The notes under the pieces: model-generated | Told to the model about the DNA's origin: nothing | The model's database searches: none | The model's input: only the letters and a program-made list of their open reading frames with translations | Translations under genes and position numbers: made by a program | Shown here: positions 1 through 48,474 of the stretch, piece after piece | Layout of the letters: each line of letters opens with the position of its first letter | Position numbering within the stretch: the first letter of the stretch is position 1 | NCBI RefSeq assembly: GCF_040938485.1 | Contig: NW_027271579.1 | Coordinates: 558,001-622,000 of the forward strand | Direction: 5' to 3' | Length of the DNA stretch: 64,000 nucleotides | Origin: Diadema antillarum | Lineage: Eukaryota

Positions 1-2017
1 CTTCAGTCACTATGGAACCATCCTTTTTTTGCCACCAGTTGTTCAGCTCTGATTCTCCTCTGTATGGGTGGTATTCACAAAAGAGTTTTTTCACCAGCAG
101 TGTATCCTTTTACCTGTGCGTTTTAAAATCTAATTTGTTACATTTCACTTTCTGTCCTCTTTTTTTTTGTCTCAACAACTGCTGGTACCATTTCAGTCAA
201 AGGATATTCAATGAATGTATGTCTTGTAAACCATTCAAGGCAACATACTGCATGTAATTCTTTATTCAATTTGTCAATAAAAGCATTGGTACACGTTAAA
301 AAAGAAGACAGCTACCCCCCGCCCCCCCCCCCCCCCAAATCAAAAATCCAAACAAGAAACGGAACAAAAAGTCTCCAACTCATGTAGCTCAAGAAATACA
401 GTACATGTATTGTATAATTGCCATTATGCAAGCCAATACATAGCAAATATAGTCATAATATACACAGGGTATCAAGGTGAGGAATGATTGTTGTCTTCCG
501 AAACAAGATGTCTTGAAGAAAGAATGTCACCCTGGAATATGCAGTCCCGGGACTGTCTGATTGATAGCTTTAAAAGAGCATTACTACCATTCCAGTGATA
601 GTTAAAAGAATCTTGCATGTGAGACACATAACTATGCAAAGACCACCCTCGTCTCTGCCTTGCTTTGTTCCTATGTAATAGATACGAAAGTGTAATTCCA
701 CTTCATATTCAAATCAAATCAGTCTGGGATGACAGCGACAAATCAAGCAGGAATGTTAAGGTGTTTTTCCAAACTCAAATATAGAATACTGTAAGCAAGC
801 TAAATGGAAATTCTGCTTCATATTAAATTATATTTGAATGACAGAGACAGAACAAACAGAAGATGGTAAAGAGTTTCTCCAAACTCAAGCATATAACAGG
901 CAAGTTGAGGTGACTCTATCAATGCCTAATAAGTCTGCCGTTGACCTGTACTCAGACCTTCAGAAAATTTCCTTTTTTTGAAGTGCAGTCAAAGTATCAT
1001 TTATACATGCGCTTGTATCCTTCATATCCTCGACATACTGTCTTAATCTAATTTGCATGTTTCATTGTAACTGATGTCAGTATTTGACAAGAACTATACT
1101 TTAAACCTCCATAACTTTCTTTCATTGTATGTCCAAGTAGATGAAATCTCTACCATTTGGTTTTACTTCAGTTACTACGGGCAACTGTGAACACAGAATG
1201 GCATACTGGTAATTTTGCCCTTGAACCTGTGGTTTCACTAGGGGTACTAACCCATTGTGACAATGGTATCACCTCCACACACAGTGCATTGCATTTCCTT
1301 GACAGTCAATACTTTTTCTTTTCTTTTCTTTTTTTCATCTCAGAATAACAGCAAGGTGCAGGAATGTTCTAGACAATTTTAATATGTCCTGTGATGATGT
1401 AAGTACACTCCATCATTGTATTGTCGGTCTGTCCTAGACTGACCCTGTGCAAGGTGAACTTAACCTCTACTGAGACAAGTTAGCAATCCACATAATGAAT
1501 TGTAAAGGTGTGTTGGTAGAATATTTCATACTGTGTGCTCAATAAAATACTGATAATCAGATAAGTAATGAAAATAAAATGTCATCATTACACTCTTTTA
1601 AGTATATATAAGGTTTCTAAACAAAGTTAGAAGGGTCACTGACTTATTTGTGTACTGATTATTGCTAGTTATTTTCAATAGATCATTTAAACATTGGATT
1701 TTTGTTGATGAGATGAAGAAATGCCCATTCAGACTTCATGCACTGGTATTAGATTTCGAACCATTTGATGAACCATTTAACTGTACTATCCACTCACCTG
1801 TGCAGTATACTGTTAATTGTTCAGCAATTTTTCAAATGCTTGAACATGGCAAATCACCCCGTAAAATCACTTGTTTCATCTTGCCTTCCAGACGGGCAAG
1901 CTTATACTGAAGCCACCTCGGAGTGGACCGACGCAGAACAGGGTGCCTCTGCTACGATGGCCCAACGACTTGGACTCGAGGGTGGCCGATCATACAGCTC
2001 ACCAGCACAATCAGTGA
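1..2017 (+). CDS. CNEP1R1: CTD nuclear envelope phosphatase 1 regulatory subunit 1 (TMEM188/Spo7 homolog), 3' part; exons <1-101, 1344-1398, 1892-2017
   Basis: The spliced translation [65 protein letters not shown]...HNQ* matches recalled human [58 protein letters not shown]. All junctions are GT-AG with compatible phases (2, then 0). Stop TGA is at 2015-2017. Confidence 0.95.
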
Positions 2018-3194
2018 CCCCTGCACCTTGCCCTAGTGACCTCCCCATCCCCATCTCAATGTCAGGCCCCCCTGCGGTGATGCCATAGGGGCTGGCAGAA
2101 TATGTTTGCGACTGAGTGCAGAATTCTGTGCTGTTTGGTAGATGCTGCTCTGCTCAAAGCTTGCATCCTGAGAGAAAGTTGTCTGGAAGTGGCCTCTTTC
2201 CACAGGACTGTAGAGTCATGGAAGAGTCAGCAGTATCAAGTACATGAGGGACATTCCTGATGTCTTAAAAACTGTGGTTCACTGGTAATGATAAATACAA
2301 TCATGCAATTCTATTTGTGCTGTCTTTGAGACATCTTGCTGATTCCAAATGTGTTGTAAAAGTTGCTGACAGGACCTGGAATATTGGTTAATGGCTCACA
2401 CAGTATACATTATAAAAAAATAATGCATGCTGATGACAAATATATTCCATCAATCTAATGATCACATTCAAACTATCTATAGGTGGTGTGGATATGATAT
2501 TGGATGGCTCAGTGTAAGGTTTATAGTGAATGAGAGGAAAGGTGGGTTTATGTAGATATTGTCATCTTTGTGTTTTGAAACCATTTAGCTGCACCATGTG
2601 ATGACATTATGAGTACAGGGTAGAAAGTGAAAGTGAAATGTTGATACAGCTCTGATGGAAGTTAGAAGGAATGACCCTAATGCAAATGACTCCAGTTCCT
2701 TTACCTTTTTTATCCTCCTGAAAAACCCACCTAACAATTTGCATACCATTACCAGATTACTTTTGACATCAGAGACAATGCGCAGTGTATGATCTGTGAA
2801 TAAAGATGTAAAGTGTATATGTGAATACGTAGCAGCAAAAACTTTATCTTGCAAATGAGTATACCTGCTACTGTATCCATTCCAGATAAATACTCATCTT
2901 TTTAACAGGAGAGATGAATTTTATTATTTCGATTTTATCAGATGTTCTCCTATTTTCATGAACAATCGTGCATAGGCAAGTGTGGGAAATCGACAATAAA
3001 ATTATTTGTCAACTGTTACCCCCCAAAGTGTTCTTATTTGATGAGCTTCGGAGTTGGCAGGTATAAATGAGTCATGAAGATCTAGTGTGTGCAGGCATAT
3101 TACAGGAACCAACCTTAATGCAAGGATTTAGGGGCACCCACTGTAAGAATATGTGGCAAAGTATGTAGAACAAAGAAGCATCTATGGTTCTGTA

Positions 3195-4408: not shown

Positions 4409-6881
4409 TATGTGCTTGTCTTTGAAGGTTTAAGGAAGAACCATAGAGAGATTGTGACAGTCCTAAGTGGTAGATACAGCTTGTGATAATAGGTAATAAT
4501 TGAAGTCACCTCTGTAACAGACACCAAGTTAATACATGTGCCTGGAAACTTTTTACTCGATCCAAAGCCCCTGTCCAGTTGATGGCATGTAGCAATCAAG
4601 GTACAATGGAATCTTTTTTTAACAAGGTCAGATACAATGTATAACAAAACCTTCCAAAACAAGTTGATTTTGCAGGTCCCAATTCTTTGTATTTCTTTGT
4701 TTTTGTAGCCTGATATAGTGAGAGACCCGATATGTACATGTACCAAGGTAATTGTCATGAATTTTGGTCCTTGTTATAACAAGGTATCCCTGTTGAGTGC
4801 TCAAAATATTGATGCTCATGTTTGTGTAGTCTTAATTGCTGACTGAAATGTTCACACACTATTGGTTGTGTGAAGTAACATGTTGTATAAATTGAAGCAA
4901 AAATGTTGCAGCTGCAGGTTGTTTGTGGTGAAAGCCAATGCAATACTTGTAGCATGGGTGAATATATGGCCAGAAATTACCAATGCAGTGCACACCATAC
5001 TTAGTCGACAGTACTGGTATTGATGACAGAAAAGCATTATTGCTGTTTTGTTTTTGAAGGTTTTTTTTAAAATCATTCTAGATTTCAACTTATCAATCTT
5101 TTCCCCTGCATCTGGTGATTTCCCAAACTGTATACAGGCCTTAAAGTTCTTGGTCATCTCTGAAGAGTATACATATACAGTACAATGTACAGTGATTCAC
5201 TCAGTGTTAAATGCATGCAGGCTGTGAGACTATTCCTTTAACAGCAGTCCTTTCTTGCCATCTGATGTTCTGCAGTCTATTAAGGCTGTGTGCCCCTCGT
5301 TCAGGAAAATGAAAATCCATCAGCATGTCAGAATGTGTTCTGTGGAAATGTAATCACTGCGTGATTAGTCATAAGAAGGTATCCACTGGATTGTGAAGTA
5401 TATACTTAAAAAAAAAAAATCATGTATTCTCATATTATGGTCTCATTCTTGCAATGAACATGGGAATATCATGTGATAATTTAGTATCTTTATAGGTTTT
5501 CTTCCAATCTTAACACTTAAAATGAGCTTTCAAGGAATTTTCCAATAGTCTTTGTATGTGTATTTCACGTAGCAAGTGTATATGATCATAGGTTGTAAAG
5601 TGTACTCATATATGGATGGATATAAAGTATGCGTTGCCTGAGTTGTAGGTGCATGAGCCAAAAATCTCCTAACTCGAACCACCCCCCCCCCAAAAAAAAA
5701 AAAAAAAAAACTAAAAAAAATCTTGATTTTCCTCCATACATTCACATACAAGATTTCAGCGGAGTTGAAAATGTAGAGTCCTTTTCACATGAAATATAGG
5801 CGAATTTAATTGATAGAGTCAGTGTGGCTGTGGTCTTCTCGTAATTCACAACACGAACTTACACCACACTATCATGGGGTTCATACAACTCCAATATGCT
5901 CTCCTTGTTTTCTGCACATGTACACATCTTTTTTCCCCCACCCAGTGTAACAAGTCAATAATTAGATAGGATTGGAAGTCAAAGTGAGTTTTTGTGAGGG
6001 TGTTTCATCCTGAGCCATGATGTAAATGAGTGATGTTCATAGATAAAAGTCAGTGTCACAACTGGAGCAAAGTCAATATCTGCATGATTCCTGCATGTGT
6101 GATCCTGTGATTACAATAGTGAAAACAACAAAGTTAAGATGACTGTGGTGATTGCTGGTGGGTAACTGGCTAGTTGTGCATGTCATAACTGGACATCAGC
6201 TAGTGAAACGGCAATGATCTGCAATTGAAATGTGCTGACAGCACCGCCTGTGATTCAGCAATACAGGAGTTTTGTAATGCACAATTAAAACAAGAAAGTC
6301 TGCCTGGTCCTTCCCAGCAACTACCAATGGTTGTGCAAATTAGTTGAGTTGAGGAATATCACAGAAGATCAACAGCTACATGTATAGAAAACAGGTTGGG
6401 AAATCACAAATTACTCAGATCACGCAAAAGAACGACGACAGAGCTCCTATACAATAGCCACCTGGAATAAAGTTTACAAGTGTATTATCAATATACAGTA
6501 TTACAGGTATCATGCTTTGAAGGGTTTGAAAATACTAGTAAATAAAAATGCTAGCGCTTCACTCGTATTACATATAAAATGAAGTTTTTGGAATTTGAAG
6601 GTTTACATATTTTAATGAATTAGAAATATTGGTTACAACCTCATATGCAAATTGGGGATGGTGATGTCATCTCATTAGTGTTCCATTGACCTTTATGCAA
6701 ATCTTCATGAATTCACTTTCACTGTCAAAATTTATACCAATTGGATTATGTTCCACTCTTCACATGATAGTGATATGCTAACACAGCAAAATGACTTCTG
6801 AGGGGGAAAGTTGTTAGATTACATTGTATTTGAATAAAAAGTTGCAATATTTTTTTGGTGAAAACAGATGGTGGAGCTGTG

Positions 6882-7019
6882 NNNNNNNNNNNNNNNNNNN
6901 NNNNNNNNNNNNNNNNNNNNNNNNNNNNNNNNNNNNNNNNNNNNNNNNNNNNNNNNNNNNNNNNNNNNNNNNNNNNNNNNNNNNNNNNNNNNNNNNNNNN
7001 NNNNNNNNNNNNNNNNNNN
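6882..7019. other. Assembly gap (138 N)
   Basis: Run of N. Confidence 1.
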
Positions 7020-9206
7020 GTATATTAAGTCATAATCCATCATGCCATCAACAGTTATTAATACTGTACAAAAGAACACAAGAAGCAAAATATATTTCAT
7101 TTCTCTTCCTCTGATTGTACAAATTCCTGAAGACAGTGTGCTGAATAAGGCACATGTTAACATTTGTTATATATCATTCTGAATACAAAATAAAATTCAG
7201 AACGTCTATGTTCATGAATTTACACTTTACATGTAAAAAGGAAGTACTCATGGATATATATTGCCATTTTTATAAATATTTACAGATATAAAACATGAAG
7301 GCAGTTATGGTTTGCCCACACAGAAAAACTGAAGACAGACAGCAGAGCAAGGAAGTATAATTCTGCACCATGTACAAGTTAGCTGTATACAGTAAAATCA
7401 CATGAATGTACGTGTATTTAAACAGGGTAAAGATTTCATCAAAGTAGAAACTAGTGTGAGAAAAAGTATCTAAGAGTTTCACAAGATTTCACAAACAGTG
7501 ACATAAGCTGCAACCCACTGCAAAACAGAGTATCTGTATCCTACAAACCTGGTCACAAATCATTGTAAAATTTAATTTTGACATGATATAGACTTACTTG
7601 TAGTTATAAGTGAGGTACTTCAAAACTGTCCCATTTGATGTCTCTGCATGACAAAATGTCTACCATTCTGTTAATTTGATTTTATGGCTTGGGTACAGAA
7701 ATTATTTTGAACATGGTTTAACACTTTTGATAAAATGAGTATAATCTTGGTCGGTAGGTAAAATGAGGAGTGTTTGAGAATACAGTGTACTCTTAATCTC
7801 TTGTGGCGATACCTGCACTACAACTTTTACTATCCTCTGAACAAAAGTCCATTTCACACTTAATCACTTTCATTTCATCCATTTTGATTTCTTCTACCTT
7901 TTCCAGGATACTACTATGCTTGACAACATGAATGTATACATTTTGTTTTAGCTTAGAAGATAATCATGTGAAGTACTCTTTATACACACATGGATTTCAT
8001 GAATAGTCAACTCTGTAGAAATCAAGTCCCAAGTGGAGAAAGGAAGATACATATTTAACTAGCTAAACTATAGCTAGGTTATTTGCTTGATGAAGAGAGA
8101 GAGACAGAGAGAGGAAAAAAGACTGAACTTGCTTGACTTATTCAAGTTATTGTGTACACCACAAATCATTATTTTAGAATACACTGTAGCAGAAGCTTTC
8201 ATATAAATAATCACACATGCAAAGGCCTTGTCCGTTTGTAAATGAATACATAAACACAGCTGCATAGATCTGGCAATGTTTACTCTACCTCTCAGAGGTA
8301 AGAACAAGAAAAGCACCCAATCCATTATGGGAAAAAATATCACATTTGCTTTTTTCCATATGTTGAGGACTAATTCTACATAATTGATCCAAACTACCCA
8401 AACAAACCAAAGAAATTAAATGAAAACTACGCAATAACAAGAGGTAGATAAAATCAAATAAATCTGAAGATGGCTTCAAACATAAGATAGTTATACAGAT
8501 TATAATTGATAAGATTTGATTGCAAAGGTTGCAAAGGGAGTCCTCAATGACCTCCTGACAACTTGATAACTTGTCTCTGTTCAGCGATGATACAGCTCTT
8601 TGATTAGACAGTAAAACAGCACTATCTGTTGAAGGTTATCTCATTGCCTGAGGAGACTGTCCCTGGGATGTAATGAGTATGGATTACAATTACTACCGCA
8701 GCCATTCTTGAGCACTGGTTACATCTCATGTGTTCTCTACTTAAAGTTCCTCTAGTCTGTATTTTACAACATTCTGTGATGATCTGATGATAATGAACAT
8801 GTGAATCCTGATCATTATTCAGTCTGTCTCCTGGACTGTGATAAAGACTCATGGTAGGTGATTAGGCCTACATCATTAACTTGAACAACTCTTCAAAAAT
8901 GCTAGTTGCACATCAGAAATCTGCCCTGGCAACATATACCTCCAGTTGTAGATTTCCCCTCCTAAAAAAGGGAAATAAGGGTCACTGAAATGCCTTTTTA
9001 TGACACCTCTTGATTTACCACGATGGAACTATGCCATCAAGATGAAATGTATTCATAATGCTACGGTTGAAACTTAAGCAGTGTAGACATTAGCCAACAA
9101 AGCATTGGCATCTTCACCACTGGATGATCTGAAATGGTTGACTTTGGGTGCATGATTACCGAAGTTTGGTAAATGGAAGCACGTGCATCAAAGCTGGCTA
9201 CATTCC

Positions 9207-12132
9207 TCAGTCTATGAAGTTCTTGGACACCAGGAGAACCACTCCTACCAGAATACACACCAGGCCGGCGATCGCTGCCCACTTGTTGCACTGGACAGGA
9301 CGACACTGGGACAGCAGGGCATCGTCAGCCTGTACATTGGCAGATTCATGATGATAGGAAGTAATGTTGCCTGATTTTTGGACCAGTTTTGTTTTAGTTG
9401 TCCCTACATGTATTTTCTTTTAGTTACAGAGTATCAAGAACATGAATTGGAGGTTCAGTCTTGCTTATGTCTACTGGGAATTCTCCTGCATGTCACTTTG
9501 TTTGACATTCTAATGTGTTGTTTTTTGTGTAAAAATAGTAGTGCATCACTACTGAAGTGTGACTATGGGCCATGTATGCTATTGTTGTATCTGTTTTATA
9601 TACAGTGTAATAGAAATAATAAATCAAAGAATGCTAATGTTACAGCATACTGTGAAGTACTGAGTATACATACTATACAGTGTTTAGATCAGGAGAAAGT
9701 GTTCTAGTTACAATAATTTAATAAAAAAAGGATGCTGAACTTCATTCAATTAAGAATATACAAAAAAAAAAATGTATGACAAAATACATCTGCCCCTGCA
9801 CTACTGTTTTAAAGACAAGAAGAACAACTTATTCAGAAAGTTGAATTGTTTTCAGTCAAAAAAGAATGACATTAAAAAAATCTTACTTTGCAATTCATGG
9901 GTGTGGTTAGTAAACACACCCCAAAGTCATGTCTTTATCTAAAACATTATTGTTAAAGTATATATTAAATATATATATATATATATATATATGAAAAAAA
10001 AAATATATATATGATTACTCACTGAATCCAATCTCTTTTCTGCCTTGTCATTGATATCATCGACATCAACAGTATCACGATTGCTGACAGTTGGCATGTG
10101 TTTAAGCCCAAGCACTCTCTGAACTTTGGGTGTACTTCTCTGTCGTACACGTAGGCTCCTTCTCAGCAGCCCAGGAGTCTCAATGGAAACTTGACTTCTT
10201 GTTAGCACTGTGGAATTTCTGGTGGTTGATGCTTCAGAATCACTGTCTTGACTGGTCAGTCGGTCACTGCGGCTTCCTTCAACAGTCTTGCTGTCTGAAT
10301 GCTGGTGCGATTGTCTCTTCTTAAAGTCCTCAAGGATGTCTGCACAGGAGACCAAGTTCTCCTCTGGCTCCCACGTATCCTCTTGTGGGCCAAATCCTTT
10401 CCAACGGATTCGATACTCGGTCTGCCCATTCCTCTTCTGCCTTGATCTAAGAATTTCTTGAACCTGTATGCAACAAATTATGATGTACTGAATTCAAAAG
10501 ACATCATGACATATGATTGGTGAATTATGTATGACCTAGTTAGGAAGCATTTGATTTTGCTACCATAATTTTTAGTAATCAGGGCAATTATCCCCAAGGA
10601 CAATATTACATCCAGGTTAAATACTGGTTAGTGTAAGGTTAGAGTAAAGATTAGGGCAAGATTTAGGGTTAGAGTTAGGATTAGGTTCAGGATTAGGATT
10701 AGGGTTAGAACCGTTAGGGTCAGGGGAAGGGACTGGGGTAACTGTCCAGGGGGTAATTGCCCTAGACTGTAATTTTCATCTTCACACACCAATGCATTTT
10801 ATTTTTCCATACTTTTGTATGATAAATCTTTCTAATTCTGAAGAGTTAAAAGGGAGTAGGATGCTACAAGAAAACAGGTGGAAATTTCTTTAAATACTGG
10901 TCTAGTTTATTGGGCAAGTATTTTGCTTTTCATTATTTGGCTATATACATGTACATTGTAGGCTGCCTTTACGTATATTTGCCAACATTTTGAAAGAGAA
11001 TGAAAAAAAAATGAAGATGACCAAGAATGATATAGATCTATTAAATTAGGGTAAACGACAGAGAAACTCACTATGATTATAATACTTCAGTCTTATAATG
11101 GTTAGGATTAGAGTAACCGCAGCAGCGACCCCAATACGTACCGTAATTATGTTACAGCGCCCAGCGCCGGGGTTAAGATTAGAGTTGCCTTGGATGTTCA
11201 CTACACACAGAATAAATTGGTCTGTGACACAACATTGATTATTGGTGTGTTGCGACATTGATCGGCCAGTTAGTCCTAAACAGAGTGATGCATGGTGATG
11301 TACAAGAATATAGCTGTTGCCAGAAATCTATCTCACTCCTTAGGTGGAAATATTGTTTGAAAAGTATGAAATGTCGACTGATGGGTAGGTACGACAGTAT
11401 ATACTACGTAAGTGTTCTTTTTGTCACATTGTTTGTGCTTGATCTTTTTCATCCTCTATAGTTCAACCCTTTTCAGTTTGGGGTATACATATCCTTTTTT
11501 GTGAGGCATTCCCATCATTTTTCTTTACACCACAAACAAGATAACATATCGCAATTGAGAGATTGGTTGCCCTGTGATTACATCAGCTAAAGAAGTAATT
11601 AGTCTTACTCTTACCATGCCTTTTTGTGTACAATCACTCTCGCTCTCTCTCCTAGCCCATGGAGACTTCCATCATGTACACTGCACTGCCACCTGCTCAC
11701 TGCACAAAAATTTGATCGCCTGATTCTTTAAGTTTTACAACAAAAACCCGAGCCCATATTCTTCAAAATCTACACACATCACCCACGACGACAGAACATA
11801 CATTTGTGGTACAGTATATACTGGGTGCTAAAGCAAGCAAAGATAACTGGTAGTTAAAATAGTATCTGAGGCGAGGGCACGAGCGCGGCGAGGGCGGGGC
11901 GGGGAGACACCTGTTCGCTCTTCATCTACCAACAGGTGCAGGTGCGCCGGTGCGGGTATACACAACATAATGCTATACAATTGAACAGTATATATCCGAC
12001 ATAACCGTAGTGCCAATGTCACAAAACATCGCCAGTTTATTTTACTCTAAGAACAGCTTGCCGATTCTGGTCATAAGACCCAAATGTCAGAGAAGTGGTT
12101 GTAAATTATCTCACCTCAAAGATGTCACCCAT
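9207..12132 (-). CDS. Chromodomain protein with C-terminal transmembrane anchor, 193 aa; exons 12132-12115, 10463-10023, 9329-9207
   Basis: Exon 1 is ATG GGT GAC ATC TTT GAG|gtgaga. Exon 2 (tacag|, 441 bp) begins VQEILRSRQKRNGQTEYRIRWKGFGPQEDTWEPEENLVSCADILEDFKK, a chromodomain, and ends LDS|gtgagt. Exon 3 (tacag|) is ADDALLSQCRPVQCNKWAAIAGLVCILVGVVLLVSKNFID*. All junctions are phase 0. Confidence 0.88.
10581..10763. mobile_element. MITE with internal degenerate TTAGGG-like repeats
   Basis: TIRs agggcaattatcccc ... ggggtaattgccct enclosing ttaggg/ttagga/ttagag repeats. Confidence 0.65.
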
Positions 12133-13912
12133 AATCTTTCACTCAAGCTTGCACCAGTTAATGGCAGTTATCGAGAGGAAATAACGATGCTTCCACAGCG
12201 CAGCGCAACCTTTTGGATCAACGCGCTTCCCGCTTCTAAGTAACAACCTCGGTTCCAGGTTTTCATGCGTGCAATCATAACAGATTTTCGCCCTGACTTT
12301 CTATCAGCCACGTACACATTATGACTGTTTGGTCTGTAGGGATCAAAATTTTCTACTGTTTAGAAGGAAATCTTTCATCCTAGAGATCCTTCCATGTTTC
12401 TTGTGGATGCATTGAAAATAAATTGCTCCAAGCAATGGCAATAAAGCATATCATTTTTATATATTTAATACCCAACAACTTAAAAAAAAATTAACTCTGT
12501 TTGATATGACTGGAGGTACTATACAGAAATTTCTGTCTTGATGAGAAATACGATTATCCTTGCAACACACCTTCAGTATATTAAGATGATTGGACTATAC
12601 GAACGTTACATGATCAGACACGAAGGAATCATAGAGTCCACTTTTCATGTAACCTCCTCCCCCCAAAAAAGTACCTTAATGTTTTGTTTTGTTTTGTTTT
12701 TTCATTTTCCAGTTAGCTGTATTCAGGCAGCACAATAGAAATGCCTTAACAGCCTTGGTCTCGTCCTTTGTCGTGAAGGCTGGGTAACGTGACCTCGTGA
12801 TGACCCAACCCGTAACAACCCAAACCCTGATGGACATCTAAAAATTTTTCATTTCACTTTGTATATATACAGACTCCAATACACAATTTATCGCTTATGA
12901 TAAAGTGAACATCTCTTTTATACTGTGACTGGTATAATAAGCAAATAGATGGGTTTACCAGCTATACCTAAGAGATCACAAACAATATGTTTCTTTATTC
13001 GGTCAGACCTCTAGCAAACAATCTGTGTAGGTTGAAAGATTGTGGCGTTCCCCAAGGCAGTCTACTGTGGTCTCTGTTGTTCATTACGTACATAATGACA
13101 TAAATATGCCCCCAATGTTTTAGCTTTTCAGACAACTAAATCATTGTTTTTGTTTTGTTTTGTGTGTTTTTTTTTTGCATCCGAGATCCTCACACCTTTG
13201 TGGATGCCCTAGATTTATAACTTAAAGAACATCTCCACTGAATGAGGTCAACGTCATAAGTTCGACACCCACCAGTCGTACAGCCCATCCACGAGTCATA
13301 CAGCCTATGACACTAGACAAATAATAACAAAAAACAAATTCCAATGAATATTCTGCATAGGCTACTCTATTCTATTCCCTTTTGTATATTTGCATGTTTG
13401 TATATTTGGAGACTGTTAAGATGATATTTATGCCTGAGAGCATAACAATTTAATTACCGTATTTGAATCTTGAATCTACTCGTATTTTATCTTATTCATT
13501 CATTTATTTGTTTATTACACGTGTGTCCCCTGTATACTCGTGTTTTAGCTTATCTATTTATTCGTTAATTTATTTATTACACGTGTGTCTCCCTGTATAC
13601 TCGTGTTTTAGCTAATCTATTTATTCGTTAATTTATTCATTACACGTGTGTCTCACTGATCTCTTCTCTCCAGATAGAGAGGATGGGTTTGTCTGTGGAA
13701 GTGAGTGACTAGCAAAGCAGTGGGAGGTGGGACAGAGCTTCCCACCTTACACCTGTACCATACTAGTACCTCCTGCTGGTGCTCTGGCAGTACCAAGGAG
13801 GTACTAGGCAAGCTTGCCTAGTACTTTTAGTACCTCCTTGGCAGTACTTAGTGGAGAGAACATATCGCAGTTGATTTTACACACAAACAGATCCAAACAA
13901 TTTAGAGCGACA
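12133..13912. promoter_or_regulatory. Divergent (head-to-head) promoter region between the chromodomain-TM gene and TMEM67
   Basis: The start codons at 12132 (-) and 13913 (+) are 1.8 kb apart. There is a local CpG-rich patch with an E2F-like TTCCCGC at 12227-12233. Confidence 0.6.
13512..13655. repeat. Tandem repeat, about 62-bp unit x2.3, each unit containing CACGTG
   Basis: ttattacacgtgtgtc unit starts at 13512, 13574 and 13637. Confidence 0.85.

Positions 13913-48474
<34,562 letters not shown>

What the first reader, a model, noticed from the sequence alone, without database searches (positions are those of the whole stretch)
9207..12132. Tail-anchored chromodomain protein: candidate direct heterochromatin-to-nuclear-membrane tether
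Seen in sequence: three phase-0 exons give a 193-aa protein. It has an N-terminal chromodomain (MGDIFEVQEIL...YRIRWKGFG..EDTWEPEENL), a basic Ser/Thr-rich linker, and one hydrophobic helix WAAIAGLVCILVGVVLLV (9281-9228) followed by only SKNFID*. No signal peptide is present. Established knowledge: the F/W/F positions match the three-residue aromatic cage used by HP1/CDYL/Polycomb chromodomains to read methyl-lysine. HP1 carries a chromoshadow domain, CDYL a crotonase domain and MPP8 ankyrin repeats; none of them has a TM tail. Small single-pass proteins with a nucleoplasmic N-terminus (emerin, LAP2beta) reach the inner nuclear membrane. C. elegans CEC-4 anchors H3K9me chromatin at the periphery, and LBR does so via HP1. 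Inference: this protein could fuse reader and membrane anchor in one polypeptide. I do not recognise it as a named family.
Basis: partly seen in the sequence, partly recalled or inferred. Interest (0 to 1): 0.88.

Follow-up and report, generated by a model that had tools for sequence, protein, structure and literature searches.

The report
Membrane-anchored chromodomain protein, conserved family
This sea-urchin gene really does encode a small protein that joins a histone-methyl-lysine reader (chromodomain) to a single membrane anchor at its very end; the same design occurs in sea cucumbers, amphioxus, ticks and a bug, nobody seems to have described it, and it is a good candidate for a one-piece tether between silent chromatin and the nuclear membrane.

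Summary
The three phase-0 exons (12132-12115, 10463-10023, 9329-9207, minus strand) give a 193-aa protein. It is letter for letter RefSeq XP_071503649.1 of Diadema antillarum, named only "uncharacterized protein".

What was tested:
- Residues 5-56 are a Pfam Chromo domain (E 1.7e-16). The closest solved structures are CDY1, CDYL and CDYL2.
- The aromatic cage (F/Y, W, F/Y) is intact in all 12 family members checked.
- Residues 170-188 form a strongly hydrophobic helix (GRAVY 2.9), five to six residues from the C-terminus.
- dN/dS against D. setosum is 0.15. The membrane-anchor exon has 5 synonymous changes and 1 replacement.
- The same layout (chromodomain, disordered linker, C-terminal anchor) occurs in Strongylocentrotus, Lytechinus, Holothuria, three Branchiostoma species and Ixodes ticks, with intron 1 at the same place. 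A three-chromodomain version occurs in the bug Cimex.
- Spliced mRNA contigs join the chromodomain exon to the anchor exon in Holothuria (4 runs), Ixodes and Cimex.

What was not tested:
- No junction-spanning reads could be obtained for Diadema.
- Location at the inner nuclear membrane and histone binding are inference only.

No paper on this architecture was found. The scan has no other record of it on other DNA.

Verdict: a real, unnamed, conserved protein family. The tether role is plausible but unproven.

The parts
12115..12132 (-). Exon 1 coding part: MGDIFE. It holds the first aromatic-cage residue, F5. Donor GT at 12114-12113.
   Evidence: The same 6-9 codon first exon, ending ..(F/Y)E, occurs in S. 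purpuratus, Holothuria and Ixodes and B. belcheri.
10464..12114 (-). Intron 1, phase 0. It contains a degenerate TTAGGG-like tandem repeat at 10626-10710.
10314..10463 (-). Main part of the chromodomain (residues 7-56), including cage residues W27 and F30 and the invariant DTWEPEENL.
   Evidence: Pfam PF00385 at E 1.7e-16. PDB phmmer: CDY1 6v41 at E 4.8e-16, CDYL 2dnt at 6.5e-16. AF2 pLDDT about 90 over residues 11-40. Foldseek: CDY1-H3K9me3 at 50% identity, rmsd 1.1 A.
10023..10313 (-). Rest of exon 2: C-terminal helix of the chromodomain, then a disordered Ser/Thr-rich linker (residues 57-153).
   Evidence: AF2 pLDDT below 50 for residues 66-116 and 123-164. Composition.
10092..10151 (-). 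Linker motif conserved among echinoids (residues 111-130): RxRQRxTPKVQRVLGxKxMP, with an invariant TPK.
   Evidence: Invariant columns in alignment A1. Present in Diadema, Strongylocentrotus, Lytechinus and an unnamed ENA contig. AF2 places a short strand at residues 119-121, at low confidence.
9330..10022 (-). Intron 2, phase 0, donor GTGAGT. A (TA)n microsatellite lies at 9953-9992.
9207..9329 (-). Exon 3: residues 154-193 plus the stop codon TGA at 9209-9207.
   Evidence: 5 synonymous and 1 replacement change against D. setosum.
9228..9281 (-). C-terminal transmembrane (tail-anchor) helix WAAIAGLVCILVGVVLLV (residues 170-187), followed by SKNFID.
   Evidence: GRAVY 2.86. AF2 helix 169-192 at pLDDT about 73. 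Orthologs carry an equivalent hydrophobic tail.

Best explanation
This is a genuine, conserved protein-coding gene for a small tail-anchored (type II) membrane protein. About 170 residues face the cytoplasm or nucleoplasm. They consist of a CDY/HP1-class chromodomain with an intact methyl-lysine cage, followed by a roughly 100-residue disordered Ser/Thr-rich linker. Then come one hydrophobic helix and a 5-6-residue luminal stub. Shown here: the gene model, purifying selection, the domain identity and fold, the hydrophobic tail, conservation of the architecture and of the first intron across phyla, and real splicing of the chromodomain exon to the anchor exon in relatives. Inferred: the protein is inserted post-translationally into the ER by the GET/TRC40 route, as emerin is. 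Its roughly 19 kDa exposed part is small enough to slide past nuclear pores. At the inner nuclear membrane it is retained because the chromodomain binds H3K9me2/3 and/or H3K27me3 nucleosomes. It would thereby pin methylated chromatin to the nuclear envelope. That would make it a one-polypeptide counterpart of C. elegans CEC-4, or of the LBR-HP1 pair. The confidence of 0.5 is for the whole statement including the tether role. The gene and its architecture alone stand at about 0.95.
For: Gene and architecture: the exact model is, and it is identical to RefSeq XP_071503649.1. dN/dS is 0.146, and the anchor exon has 5 synonymous to 1 replacement change. The locus is collinear with D. setosum, between TMEM67/Meckelin and TMEM18, and TMEM18 is also the neighbour in S. 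purpuratus.

Reader domain: Pfam Chromo is the only domain in all 11 scanned members. The nearest solved structures are CDY1, CDYL and CDYL2, followed by Chp1, MPP8 and HP1; many of these were crystallised with H3K9me3 or H3K27me3 peptides. The cage residues F/Y, W, F/Y are present in all 12 members checked.

Anchor: transmembrane GRAVY is 2.0-3.4 and the tails are 2-31 residues. The upstream flank is net positive in 11 of 12 members; Holothuria is the exception at -2. The echinoderm tails are neutral or acidic.

Conservation: the same layout is found in Strongylocentrotus, Lytechinus (two species), Holothuria, three Branchiostoma species and Ixodes ticks. Intron 1 lies at the identical position and phase in the five lineages checked.

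Transcripts: spliced contigs run from the chromodomain exon to the anchor exon in Holothuria (four runs), Ixodes and Cimex.

Chromatin link: an AT-hook-like RGRPR sits in the linker of two amphioxus lineages.

Route to the inner membrane: emerin is a tail-anchored protein with a roughly 25 kD exposed domain. It enters via TRC40/GET, slides past the pore and is retained by binding, whereas domains above 60 kD fail to accumulate (PMC3810338).

Precedent: CEC-4 is a chromodomain protein at the inner nuclear membrane that binds H3K9me directly (PMC4783997).
Against: No localisation or binding data exist for any member. No junction-spanning read was obtained in Diadema: the only two runs served gave contigs lying inside exon 2. 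A tail anchor by itself gives ER-wide distribution. Amphioxus tails end in KK or RK, a feature also seen in mitochondrial or peroxisomal tail anchors. Chromodomains can also bind non-histone partners. The linker is not conserved between phyla. Common descent of the echinoderm, amphioxus and tick genes is compatible with the data but not demonstrated: the tree is unresolved and the AU test only fails to reject one clade. At least one amphioxus isoform lacks the anchor (P0183).
Confidence: 0.5

Rival explanations
1. It is a tail-anchored protein of the general ER or another organelle (mitochondrial outer membrane, peroxisome). Its chromodomain reads methyl-lysine, or simply binds a peptide, on a non-histone cytoplasmic partner. 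It would have no role at the nuclear envelope.
For: Tail anchors by default populate the ER. The amphioxus tails end in KK or RK. Solved chromodomain complexes include non-histone ligands: MPP8 with DNMT3A K47me2, CBX7 with a SETDB1 peptide. No nuclear-envelope motif such as LEM was found; Pfam finds only Chromo.
Against: The domain is closest to the ARKS-motif histone readers CDY1, CDYL, CDYL2, MPP8 and HP1. The cage and the DTWEPE..NL core are invariant across phyla. The exposed domain is small enough to reach the inner membrane by diffusion, where an abundant ligand would trap it. Two amphioxus lineages carry an AT-hook-like DNA-binding motif. Echinoderm anchors are highly hydrophobic with neutral or acidic tails. 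By established knowledge of tail-anchor sorting, that favours the ER and nuclear envelope over mitochondria.
Confidence: 0.2
2. It is a stage-specific membrane-to-chromatin adaptor rather than an interphase tether. It would recruit ER or nuclear-envelope membrane to methylated chromatin at mitotic exit. Alternatively it would act only in germ cells or early cleavage, with linker phosphorylation switching it on and off.
For: The linker is Ser/Thr-rich, with an invariant TPK in echinoids and several [ST]Px[KR] sites in amphioxus. CEC-4 and lamina proteins leave chromatin in mitosis (PMC4783997). Sea-urchin cleavage demands rapid envelope reassembly (general knowledge).
Against: No expression or phosphorylation data are available. 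The proline-directed sites are few in echinoids. This is a refinement of the main reading more than an alternative to it.
Confidence: 0.15
3. It is a membrane-parked regulator. The anchor keeps the chromodomain out of the nucleoplasm until proteolysis or alternative splicing releases a soluble reader.
For: Amphioxus annotation includes a 208-aa isoform without the anchor (P0183). The long disordered linker could hold a cleavage site.
Against: No cleavage motif was identified. Holothuria, Ixodes and Cimex transcript contigs all carry the anchor exon. The anchor is under purifying selection. A small tail-anchored protein is not excluded from the inner nuclear membrane anyway.
Confidence: 0.07
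4. The anchor exon is not the real partner of exon 2 in Diadema, and the model is an annotation artefact copied between RefSeq builds.
For: No junction-spanning read was obtained for Diadema. All echinoid models are automatic predictions.
Against: Exon 3 has 5 synonymous and 1 replacement change between two Diadema species. The same terminal exon, with an anchor of conserved pattern (KWA..GL.C...LL), is present in Strongylocentrotus and Lytechinus. The Holothuria ortholog has the same three-exon structure, and its junctions are seen in four independent transcript assemblies.
Confidence: 0.04

Closest known systems
CEC-4 (C. elegans perinuclear H3K9me anchor)
   Same: One polypeptide combines an HP1-like chromodomain with a C-terminal part that places it at the inner nuclear membrane. 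It needs no HP1 adaptor and anchors H3K9-methylated chromatin (PMC4783997; PMC7111258; bioRxiv 10.1101/788356).
   Different: The papers I could read describe CEC-4's C-terminal part as a large disordered domain of unknown function needed for inner-membrane localisation, and call the protein 'membrane-associated'. They describe no transmembrane helix. Here the anchor is an unambiguous hydrophobic tail. The CEC-4 sequence could not be fetched, so homology was not tested. The reviews state there is no obvious CEC-4 homolog in mammals.
CDY / CDYL / CDYL2 chromodomain family
   Same: Closest chromodomain by sequence (E 5e-16 to 2e-14) and by fold (50% identity, rmsd 1.1 A to CDY1 bound to H3K9me3). 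The chromodomain is N-terminal. Databases name the members after this family.
   Different: There is no C-terminal enoyl-CoA hydratase/crotonase-like domain (Pfam finds only Chromo in 11 of 11 members). The proteins are much shorter (149-337 aa) and end in a membrane anchor. The automatic names are therefore misleading.
LBR with HP1 (vertebrate heterochromatin tether)
   Same: An integral inner-nuclear-membrane protein linked to H3K9-methylated chromatin (PMC9839372; PMC5617974, listed).
   Different: LBR has a Tudor domain and eight membrane spans, and reads H3K9me only through the separate HP1 adaptor. Here reader and anchor are fused, with a single span.
Emerin / LAP2beta class of tail-anchored inner-nuclear-membrane proteins
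   Same: A small nucleoplasmic N-terminal domain, one C-terminal transmembrane helix and a tiny luminal tail. The expected route is TRC40/GET insertion followed by diffusion and retention (PMC3810338).
   Different: Those proteins reach chromatin through a LEM domain and BAF or lamins. No LEM domain is present here. The proposed retention ligand is a histone mark.
PRR14
   Same: [quoted passage not shown]
   Different: PRR14 is not a membrane protein. It binds lamin A/C and uses HP1 as an adaptor.

Membership tests
Chromo domain (Pfam PF00385) | Profile match above the curated gathering score | tested here: met
   60.3 bits against a cut-off of 25.1, E 1.7e-16, residues 5-56 covering profile positions 1-53 of 53. 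All 11 members match.
Chromo domain (Pfam PF00385) | Three-stranded sheet packed against a C-terminal helix | tested here: met
   AF2 strands at 4-15, 21-27 and 36-39, helix at 40-63, pLDDT about 90. TM-score normalised to the target is 0.82-0.93 against CDY1, MPP8 and Chp1 chromodomains.
Methyl-lysine-reading chromodomains (HP1/CDY/Pc type) | Three-residue aromatic cage at the (Y/F)xVE and WKG(Y/F) positions | tested here: met
   F5, W27 and F30 in the window protein; F/Y, W, F/Y in all 12 members. Positions were assigned by alignment to CDY1 and CDYL. The role of these positions is established knowledge, not tested here.
Methyl-lysine-reading chromodomains (HP1/CDY/Pc type) | Binding of H3K9me or H3K27me peptides | not testable with these tools
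   Needs peptide arrays, ITC or pulldowns.
CDY / CDYL / CDYL2 | C-terminal enoyl-CoA hydratase/crotonase-like domain | tested here: not met
   No ECH hit in any of the 11 members at E <= 0.01. The protein ends 5-6 residues after the membrane helix.
HP1 / CBX1,3,5 | Chromoshadow domain (PF01393) | tested here: not met
   No hit.
Tail-anchored (type II, C-terminally anchored) membrane proteins | A single hydrophobic helix within about 30-40 residues of the C-terminus and no N-terminal signal sequence | tested here: met
   Best 18-residue window is 171-188 at GRAVY 2.86, followed by a 5-residue tail. There is no other hydrophobic segment, and the N-terminus MGDIFEVQEILRSR is polar. AF2 predicts a helix at 169-192. 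A dedicated predictor such as DeepTMHMM was not available.
Tail-anchored (type II, C-terminally anchored) membrane proteins | Post-translational, GET/TRC40-dependent insertion with the N-terminus on the cytoplasmic or nucleoplasmic side | not testable with these tools
   The net positive flank upstream of the helix in most members agrees with the expected topology.
CEC-4-type perinuclear anchors | Nuclear-rim localisation independent of lamin, and loss of peripheral heterochromatin on ablation | not testable with these tools
   Requires imaging and genetics.
CEC-4-type perinuclear anchors | Sequence homology to CEC-4 outside the chromodomain | not tested
   The CEC-4 sequence could not be obtained.
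LEM-domain inner-nuclear-membrane proteins | LEM domain | tested here: not met
   No Pfam hit other than Chromo above threshold.

The most novel reading that the evidence does not exclude
An old, so far unnamed bilaterian family of tail-anchored chromodomain proteins acts as a direct, single-polypeptide tether between H3K9me/H3K27me chromatin and the inner nuclear membrane. It is present in echinoderms, cephalochordates, ticks and probably hemipterans, and no vertebrate member was found in these limited searches. It would give the CEC-4 principle (reader fused to envelope anchor) a clear membrane mechanism and a wide phylogenetic footing, including invertebrate deuterostomes.
Probability: 0.35. 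Interest if true: 0.85.

Novelty: new variant of a known kind. Interest (0 to 1): 0.72.

Why it matters
How silent chromatin is held at the nuclear edge is still only partly understood. Three H3K9me-based tethers are generally cited: LBR, PRR14 and CEC-4. Only CEC-4 reads the mark itself. It is described as having no obvious mammalian homolog, and the function of its C-terminal domain is described as unknown.

A chromodomain joined directly to a transmembrane anchor is the simplest conceivable tether. This work shows that such a protein exists, is under selection and recurs across phyla. That makes the idea directly testable in sea-urchin embryos, where mRNA injection, morpholinos and imaging are routine. 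It also corrects misleading database names (CDYL2-like, testis-specific CDY-like) for a set of proteins that lack the defining CDY enzyme-like domain.

Tried and rejected
1. RNA evidence in Diadema. The whole 3.4-kb stretch found no RNA run. Exon 2 alone found two small runs of unknown kind. Their contigs lie inside exon 2 or on the intron-1 repeat and show no joints, so the junctions remain untested in this species.

2. A search restricted to the linker and anchor (residues 95-193) found only the D. setosum protein. The tail is too short and divergent for word-based search.

3. The exhaustive representative search was swamped by multi-chromodomain proteins in its top 150 hits. Only P0001, P0002 and P0003 carried the linker motif.

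4. The ESM Atlas returned only generic chromodomain clusters, with scores of 0.66 or below.

5. The chromodomain tree has 59 usable columns and is unresolved. The tail-anchored members are scattered, needing 5-6 label changes. The AU test on 239 rows did not finish. On 66 rows it does not reject a single clade (p 0.557). This permits common origin but does not show it.

6. Motif readings for TPKVQRVLG were considered and dropped as not fitting: the PxVxL chromoshadow ligand (the +2 residue is R), an ARKS histone mimic, and RVxF. Only a minimal proline-directed TPK site fits.

7. A transposon (chromovirus) origin was rejected, because of conserved synteny with TMEM18, an HP1/CDY-type cage, and purifying selection.

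8. A crotonase exon downstream was considered. No long minus-strand ORF of that kind lies between the stop codon and TMEM18, but short exons were not scanned with a profile.

9. The unnamed echinoid-like contig behind P0002 could not be read because the sample file is too large. The original CEC-4 paper is not held.

10. Earlier scan notes held nothing relevant beyond this same stretch.
Full report
**1. Observation**

On the minus strand three exons join in phase 0.
- Exon 1 is 12132-12115 and reads MGDIFE, with donor GTGAGA.
- Exon 2 is 10463-10023, 147 codons, with acceptor CATACAG and donor GTGAGT.
- Exon 3 is 9329-9207, 40 codons plus TGA, with acceptor TGTACAG.

The product has 193 residues. 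It is identical to RefSeq XP_071503649.1, "uncharacterized protein [Diadema antillarum]". The hydrophobic stretch is coded at 9281-9228, as stated.

**2. Is it a real gene?**

The D. setosum locus (L002) is collinear with the window over more than 20 kb at 82-94% identity. TMEM67/Meckelin lies divergently upstream and TMEM18 convergently downstream. In S. purpuratus the ortholog also lies next to TMEM18.

Between the two Diadema species the coding sequence has 18 synonymous and 10 replacement changes, giving dN/dS 0.146. The last exon alone has 5 synonymous changes and 1 replacement, which sits at the exon boundary. Exon 2 with its short flanks is 93.8% identical and exon 3 about 95% (6 differences in 123 bases), against 82-86% for the introns. 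So the anchor exon is translated in this frame.

Direct RNA support in Diadema could not be obtained. Two small runs hold exon-2 contigs only, with no joints.

**3. The parts**

Chromodomain:
- Residues 5-56 match Pfam Chromo at E 1.7e-16, 60 bits against a cut-off of 25.
- The nearest solved chains are CDY1 (E 4.8e-16), CDYL and CDYL2. Chp1, MPP8, HP1 and the Polycomb CBX proteins follow.
- The AlphaFold model has pLDDT about 90 over the domain.
- It superposes on CDY1 bound to H3K9me3 at rmsd 1.1 A and 50% identity. It also superposes on CDYL2-H3K27me3 and MPP8-H3K9me3.
- The cage positions are F5, W27 and F30.

Linker:
- Residues 66-164 are predicted disordered.
- They are 24% Ser/Thr and close to neutral overall.
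- The exception is a basic motif, RxRQRxTPKVQRVLGxKxMP, at residues 111-130. It is invariant among echinoids.

Anchor:
- Residues 169-192 are a predicted helix.
- The best 18-residue window has GRAVY 2.86 and five residues follow it.
- There is no other hydrophobic segment and no N-terminal signal sequence.
- Pfam finds no further domain: no chromoshadow, crotonase, ankyrin or LEM.

**4. Relatives**

Members found, with their automatic database names:
- S. purpuratus (149 aa), L. variegatus (152 aa) and L. pictus (158 aa), all named "chromodomain Y-like protein 2".
- Holothuria leucospilota (166 aa), named "Testis-specific chromodomain protein Y 2".
- Branchiostoma floridae, B. belcheri and B. 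lanceolatum (260-337 aa), named "CDYL2", "CDY2-like" or "CDYL".
- Ixodes scapularis, I. persulcatus and I. pacificus, plus a second Ixodes-like sequence known only from transcript contigs of unnamed source (185-194 aa).

All of these have an N-terminal chromodomain with the cage intact, a low-complexity linker, and a hydrophobic helix 2-31 residues from the end.

Gene structure is shared too.
- The first intron splits the domain at the same point and phase (..FE|VE..) in Diadema, Strongylocentrotus, Holothuria, Branchiostoma and Ixodes.
- Echinoids and the holothurian share the whole three-exon structure.
- This intron may be old in chromodomain genes generally, so it is consistent with common descent rather than proof of it.

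Transcript contigs show the spliced mRNA running from the chromodomain exon to the anchor exon.
- Holothuria: four runs, with exons 4 kb and 6.4 kb apart in the genome.
- Ixodes: five exons over 25 kb.

The bug Cimex lectularius has a three-chromodomain protein that also ends in a hydrophobic tail. The tail is coded by a separate last exon 14.6 kb downstream, and a spliced contig confirms the join. A similar Lygus entry may instead be intron read-through.

A chromodomain tree with 59 columns is unresolved. A single clade of the tail-anchored members is not rejected (p-AU 0.557), but it is not shown either.

**5. Mechanism**

Shown: a methyl-lysine-reader-type chromodomain and a C-terminal membrane anchor are made as one small protein, under selection, in several phyla.

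Established knowledge, from the emerin review PMC3810338:
- Tail-anchored proteins with such hydrophobic helices enter the ER post-translationally through TRC40/GET.
- Membrane proteins with small exposed domains (emerin's is about 25 kD) slide past the pore, whereas those above 60 kD do not.
- They accumulate at the inner membrane if something retains them there.

Inference:
- The exposed part here is only about 14-34 kDa.
- A CDY/HP1-type chromodomain would find its ligand, H3K9me2/3 and/or H3K27me3, only on the nucleoplasmic side.
- So the protein should concentrate at the inner nuclear membrane and hold methylated chromatin there.
- The roughly 100-residue flexible linker would give a reach of some tens of nanometres.

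Two further observations fit a chromatin-facing, possibly phospho-regulated linker. B. belcheri and B. lanceolatum carry an AT-hook-like RGRPR, and proline-directed sites are scattered through the linkers.

I put the tether reading at about 0.5. An interphase tether and a mitotic-exit or stage-specific adaptor are variants of it. The main rival is an ER or organelle role with a non-histone ligand, at about 0.2.

**6. Comparison with what is known**

It works like CEC-4, which has reader and envelope localisation in one chain, and like the LBR-HP1 pair. It is built like emerin or LAP2beta, with a tail anchor.

It is not a member of the CDY family, because it has no crotonase-like domain. It is not an HP1, because it has no chromoshadow domain. 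It is not a LEM protein.

Homology to CEC-4 beyond the chromodomain was not tested because the sequence was out of reach.

Six full-text searches found no description of a chromodomain protein with a transmembrane tail.

**7. Verdict**

The structural interpretation is supported and extended to a cross-phylum family. The functional interpretation is plausible and untested.

Novelty: a new variant of a known kind, namely a histone-mark reader or heterochromatin tether in a new fused architecture. It is present in databases only under automatic and partly misleading names. Interest is 0.72.

**Limits**
- The run of N near 6880-7020 was left untouched.

Noticed in passing
window 10626-10710 (intron 1): A degenerate telomere-like tandem repeat with TTAGGG/TTAGGA/TTAGAG units, about 8 copies of a 6-mer. 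Many unrelated contigs in the two runs match it, so it is a dispersed repeat.
   Followed up: partly
window 9953-9992: A (TA)n microsatellite starts about 30 bases after the exon 2 donor. A TA-rich simple repeat lies at the same place in D. setosum (seen as the YIYIYI read-through).
   Followed up: no
window 1065-3193 and 1874-2014 (+): A TMEM18 (PF09771) gene lies convergent with the chromodomain gene. The same neighbour is present in D. setosum and S. purpuratus.
   Followed up: partly
window about 13845-21440 (+): By collinearity with D. setosum, TMEM67/Meckelin (PF09773) is transcribed divergently, with about 2 kb between the two start codons. A shared bidirectional promoter is possible.
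   Followed up: no
window about 6880-7020: A run of N (gap or masked) lies downstream of the gene.
   Followed up: no
L013:6001-23572 and L014 (Cimex lectularius): The three-chromodomain protein XP_014255481.1 ends in a hydrophobic tail. The tail is coded by a last exon 14.6 kb downstream, across a Neuralized gene on the other strand. A spliced transcript contig confirms the join. A two-chromodomain Lygus hesperus entry (A0A0A9X9T1) has a similar end that may be read-through.
   Followed up: partly
P0189, P0196, P0200 (Branchiostoma), residue about 104: An AT-hook-like (G)RGRPR motif sits in the linker of the B. belcheri-type and B. lanceolatum proteins. The B. floridae-type sequence P0175 has TPKRTPRK there instead.
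   Followed up: no
P0183 (B. floridae, 208 aa): An annotated isoform carries the same chromodomain but has no membrane anchor, so a soluble form may coexist in amphioxus.
   Followed up: no
window 10107-10115 (residues 119-121): AlphaFold puts a three-residue strand on KVQ inside the conserved echinoid motif, at pLDDT about 50. Whether it docks into the chromodomain's own peptide groove (auto-inhibition) could not be examined.
   Followed up: no
window 12999-13094 (+): A short translated match (59% over 32 aa) to an ORF in intron 1 of the S. purpuratus ortholog (L001:12683-12973, minus strand). It is probably a shared transposon fragment.
   Followed up: no
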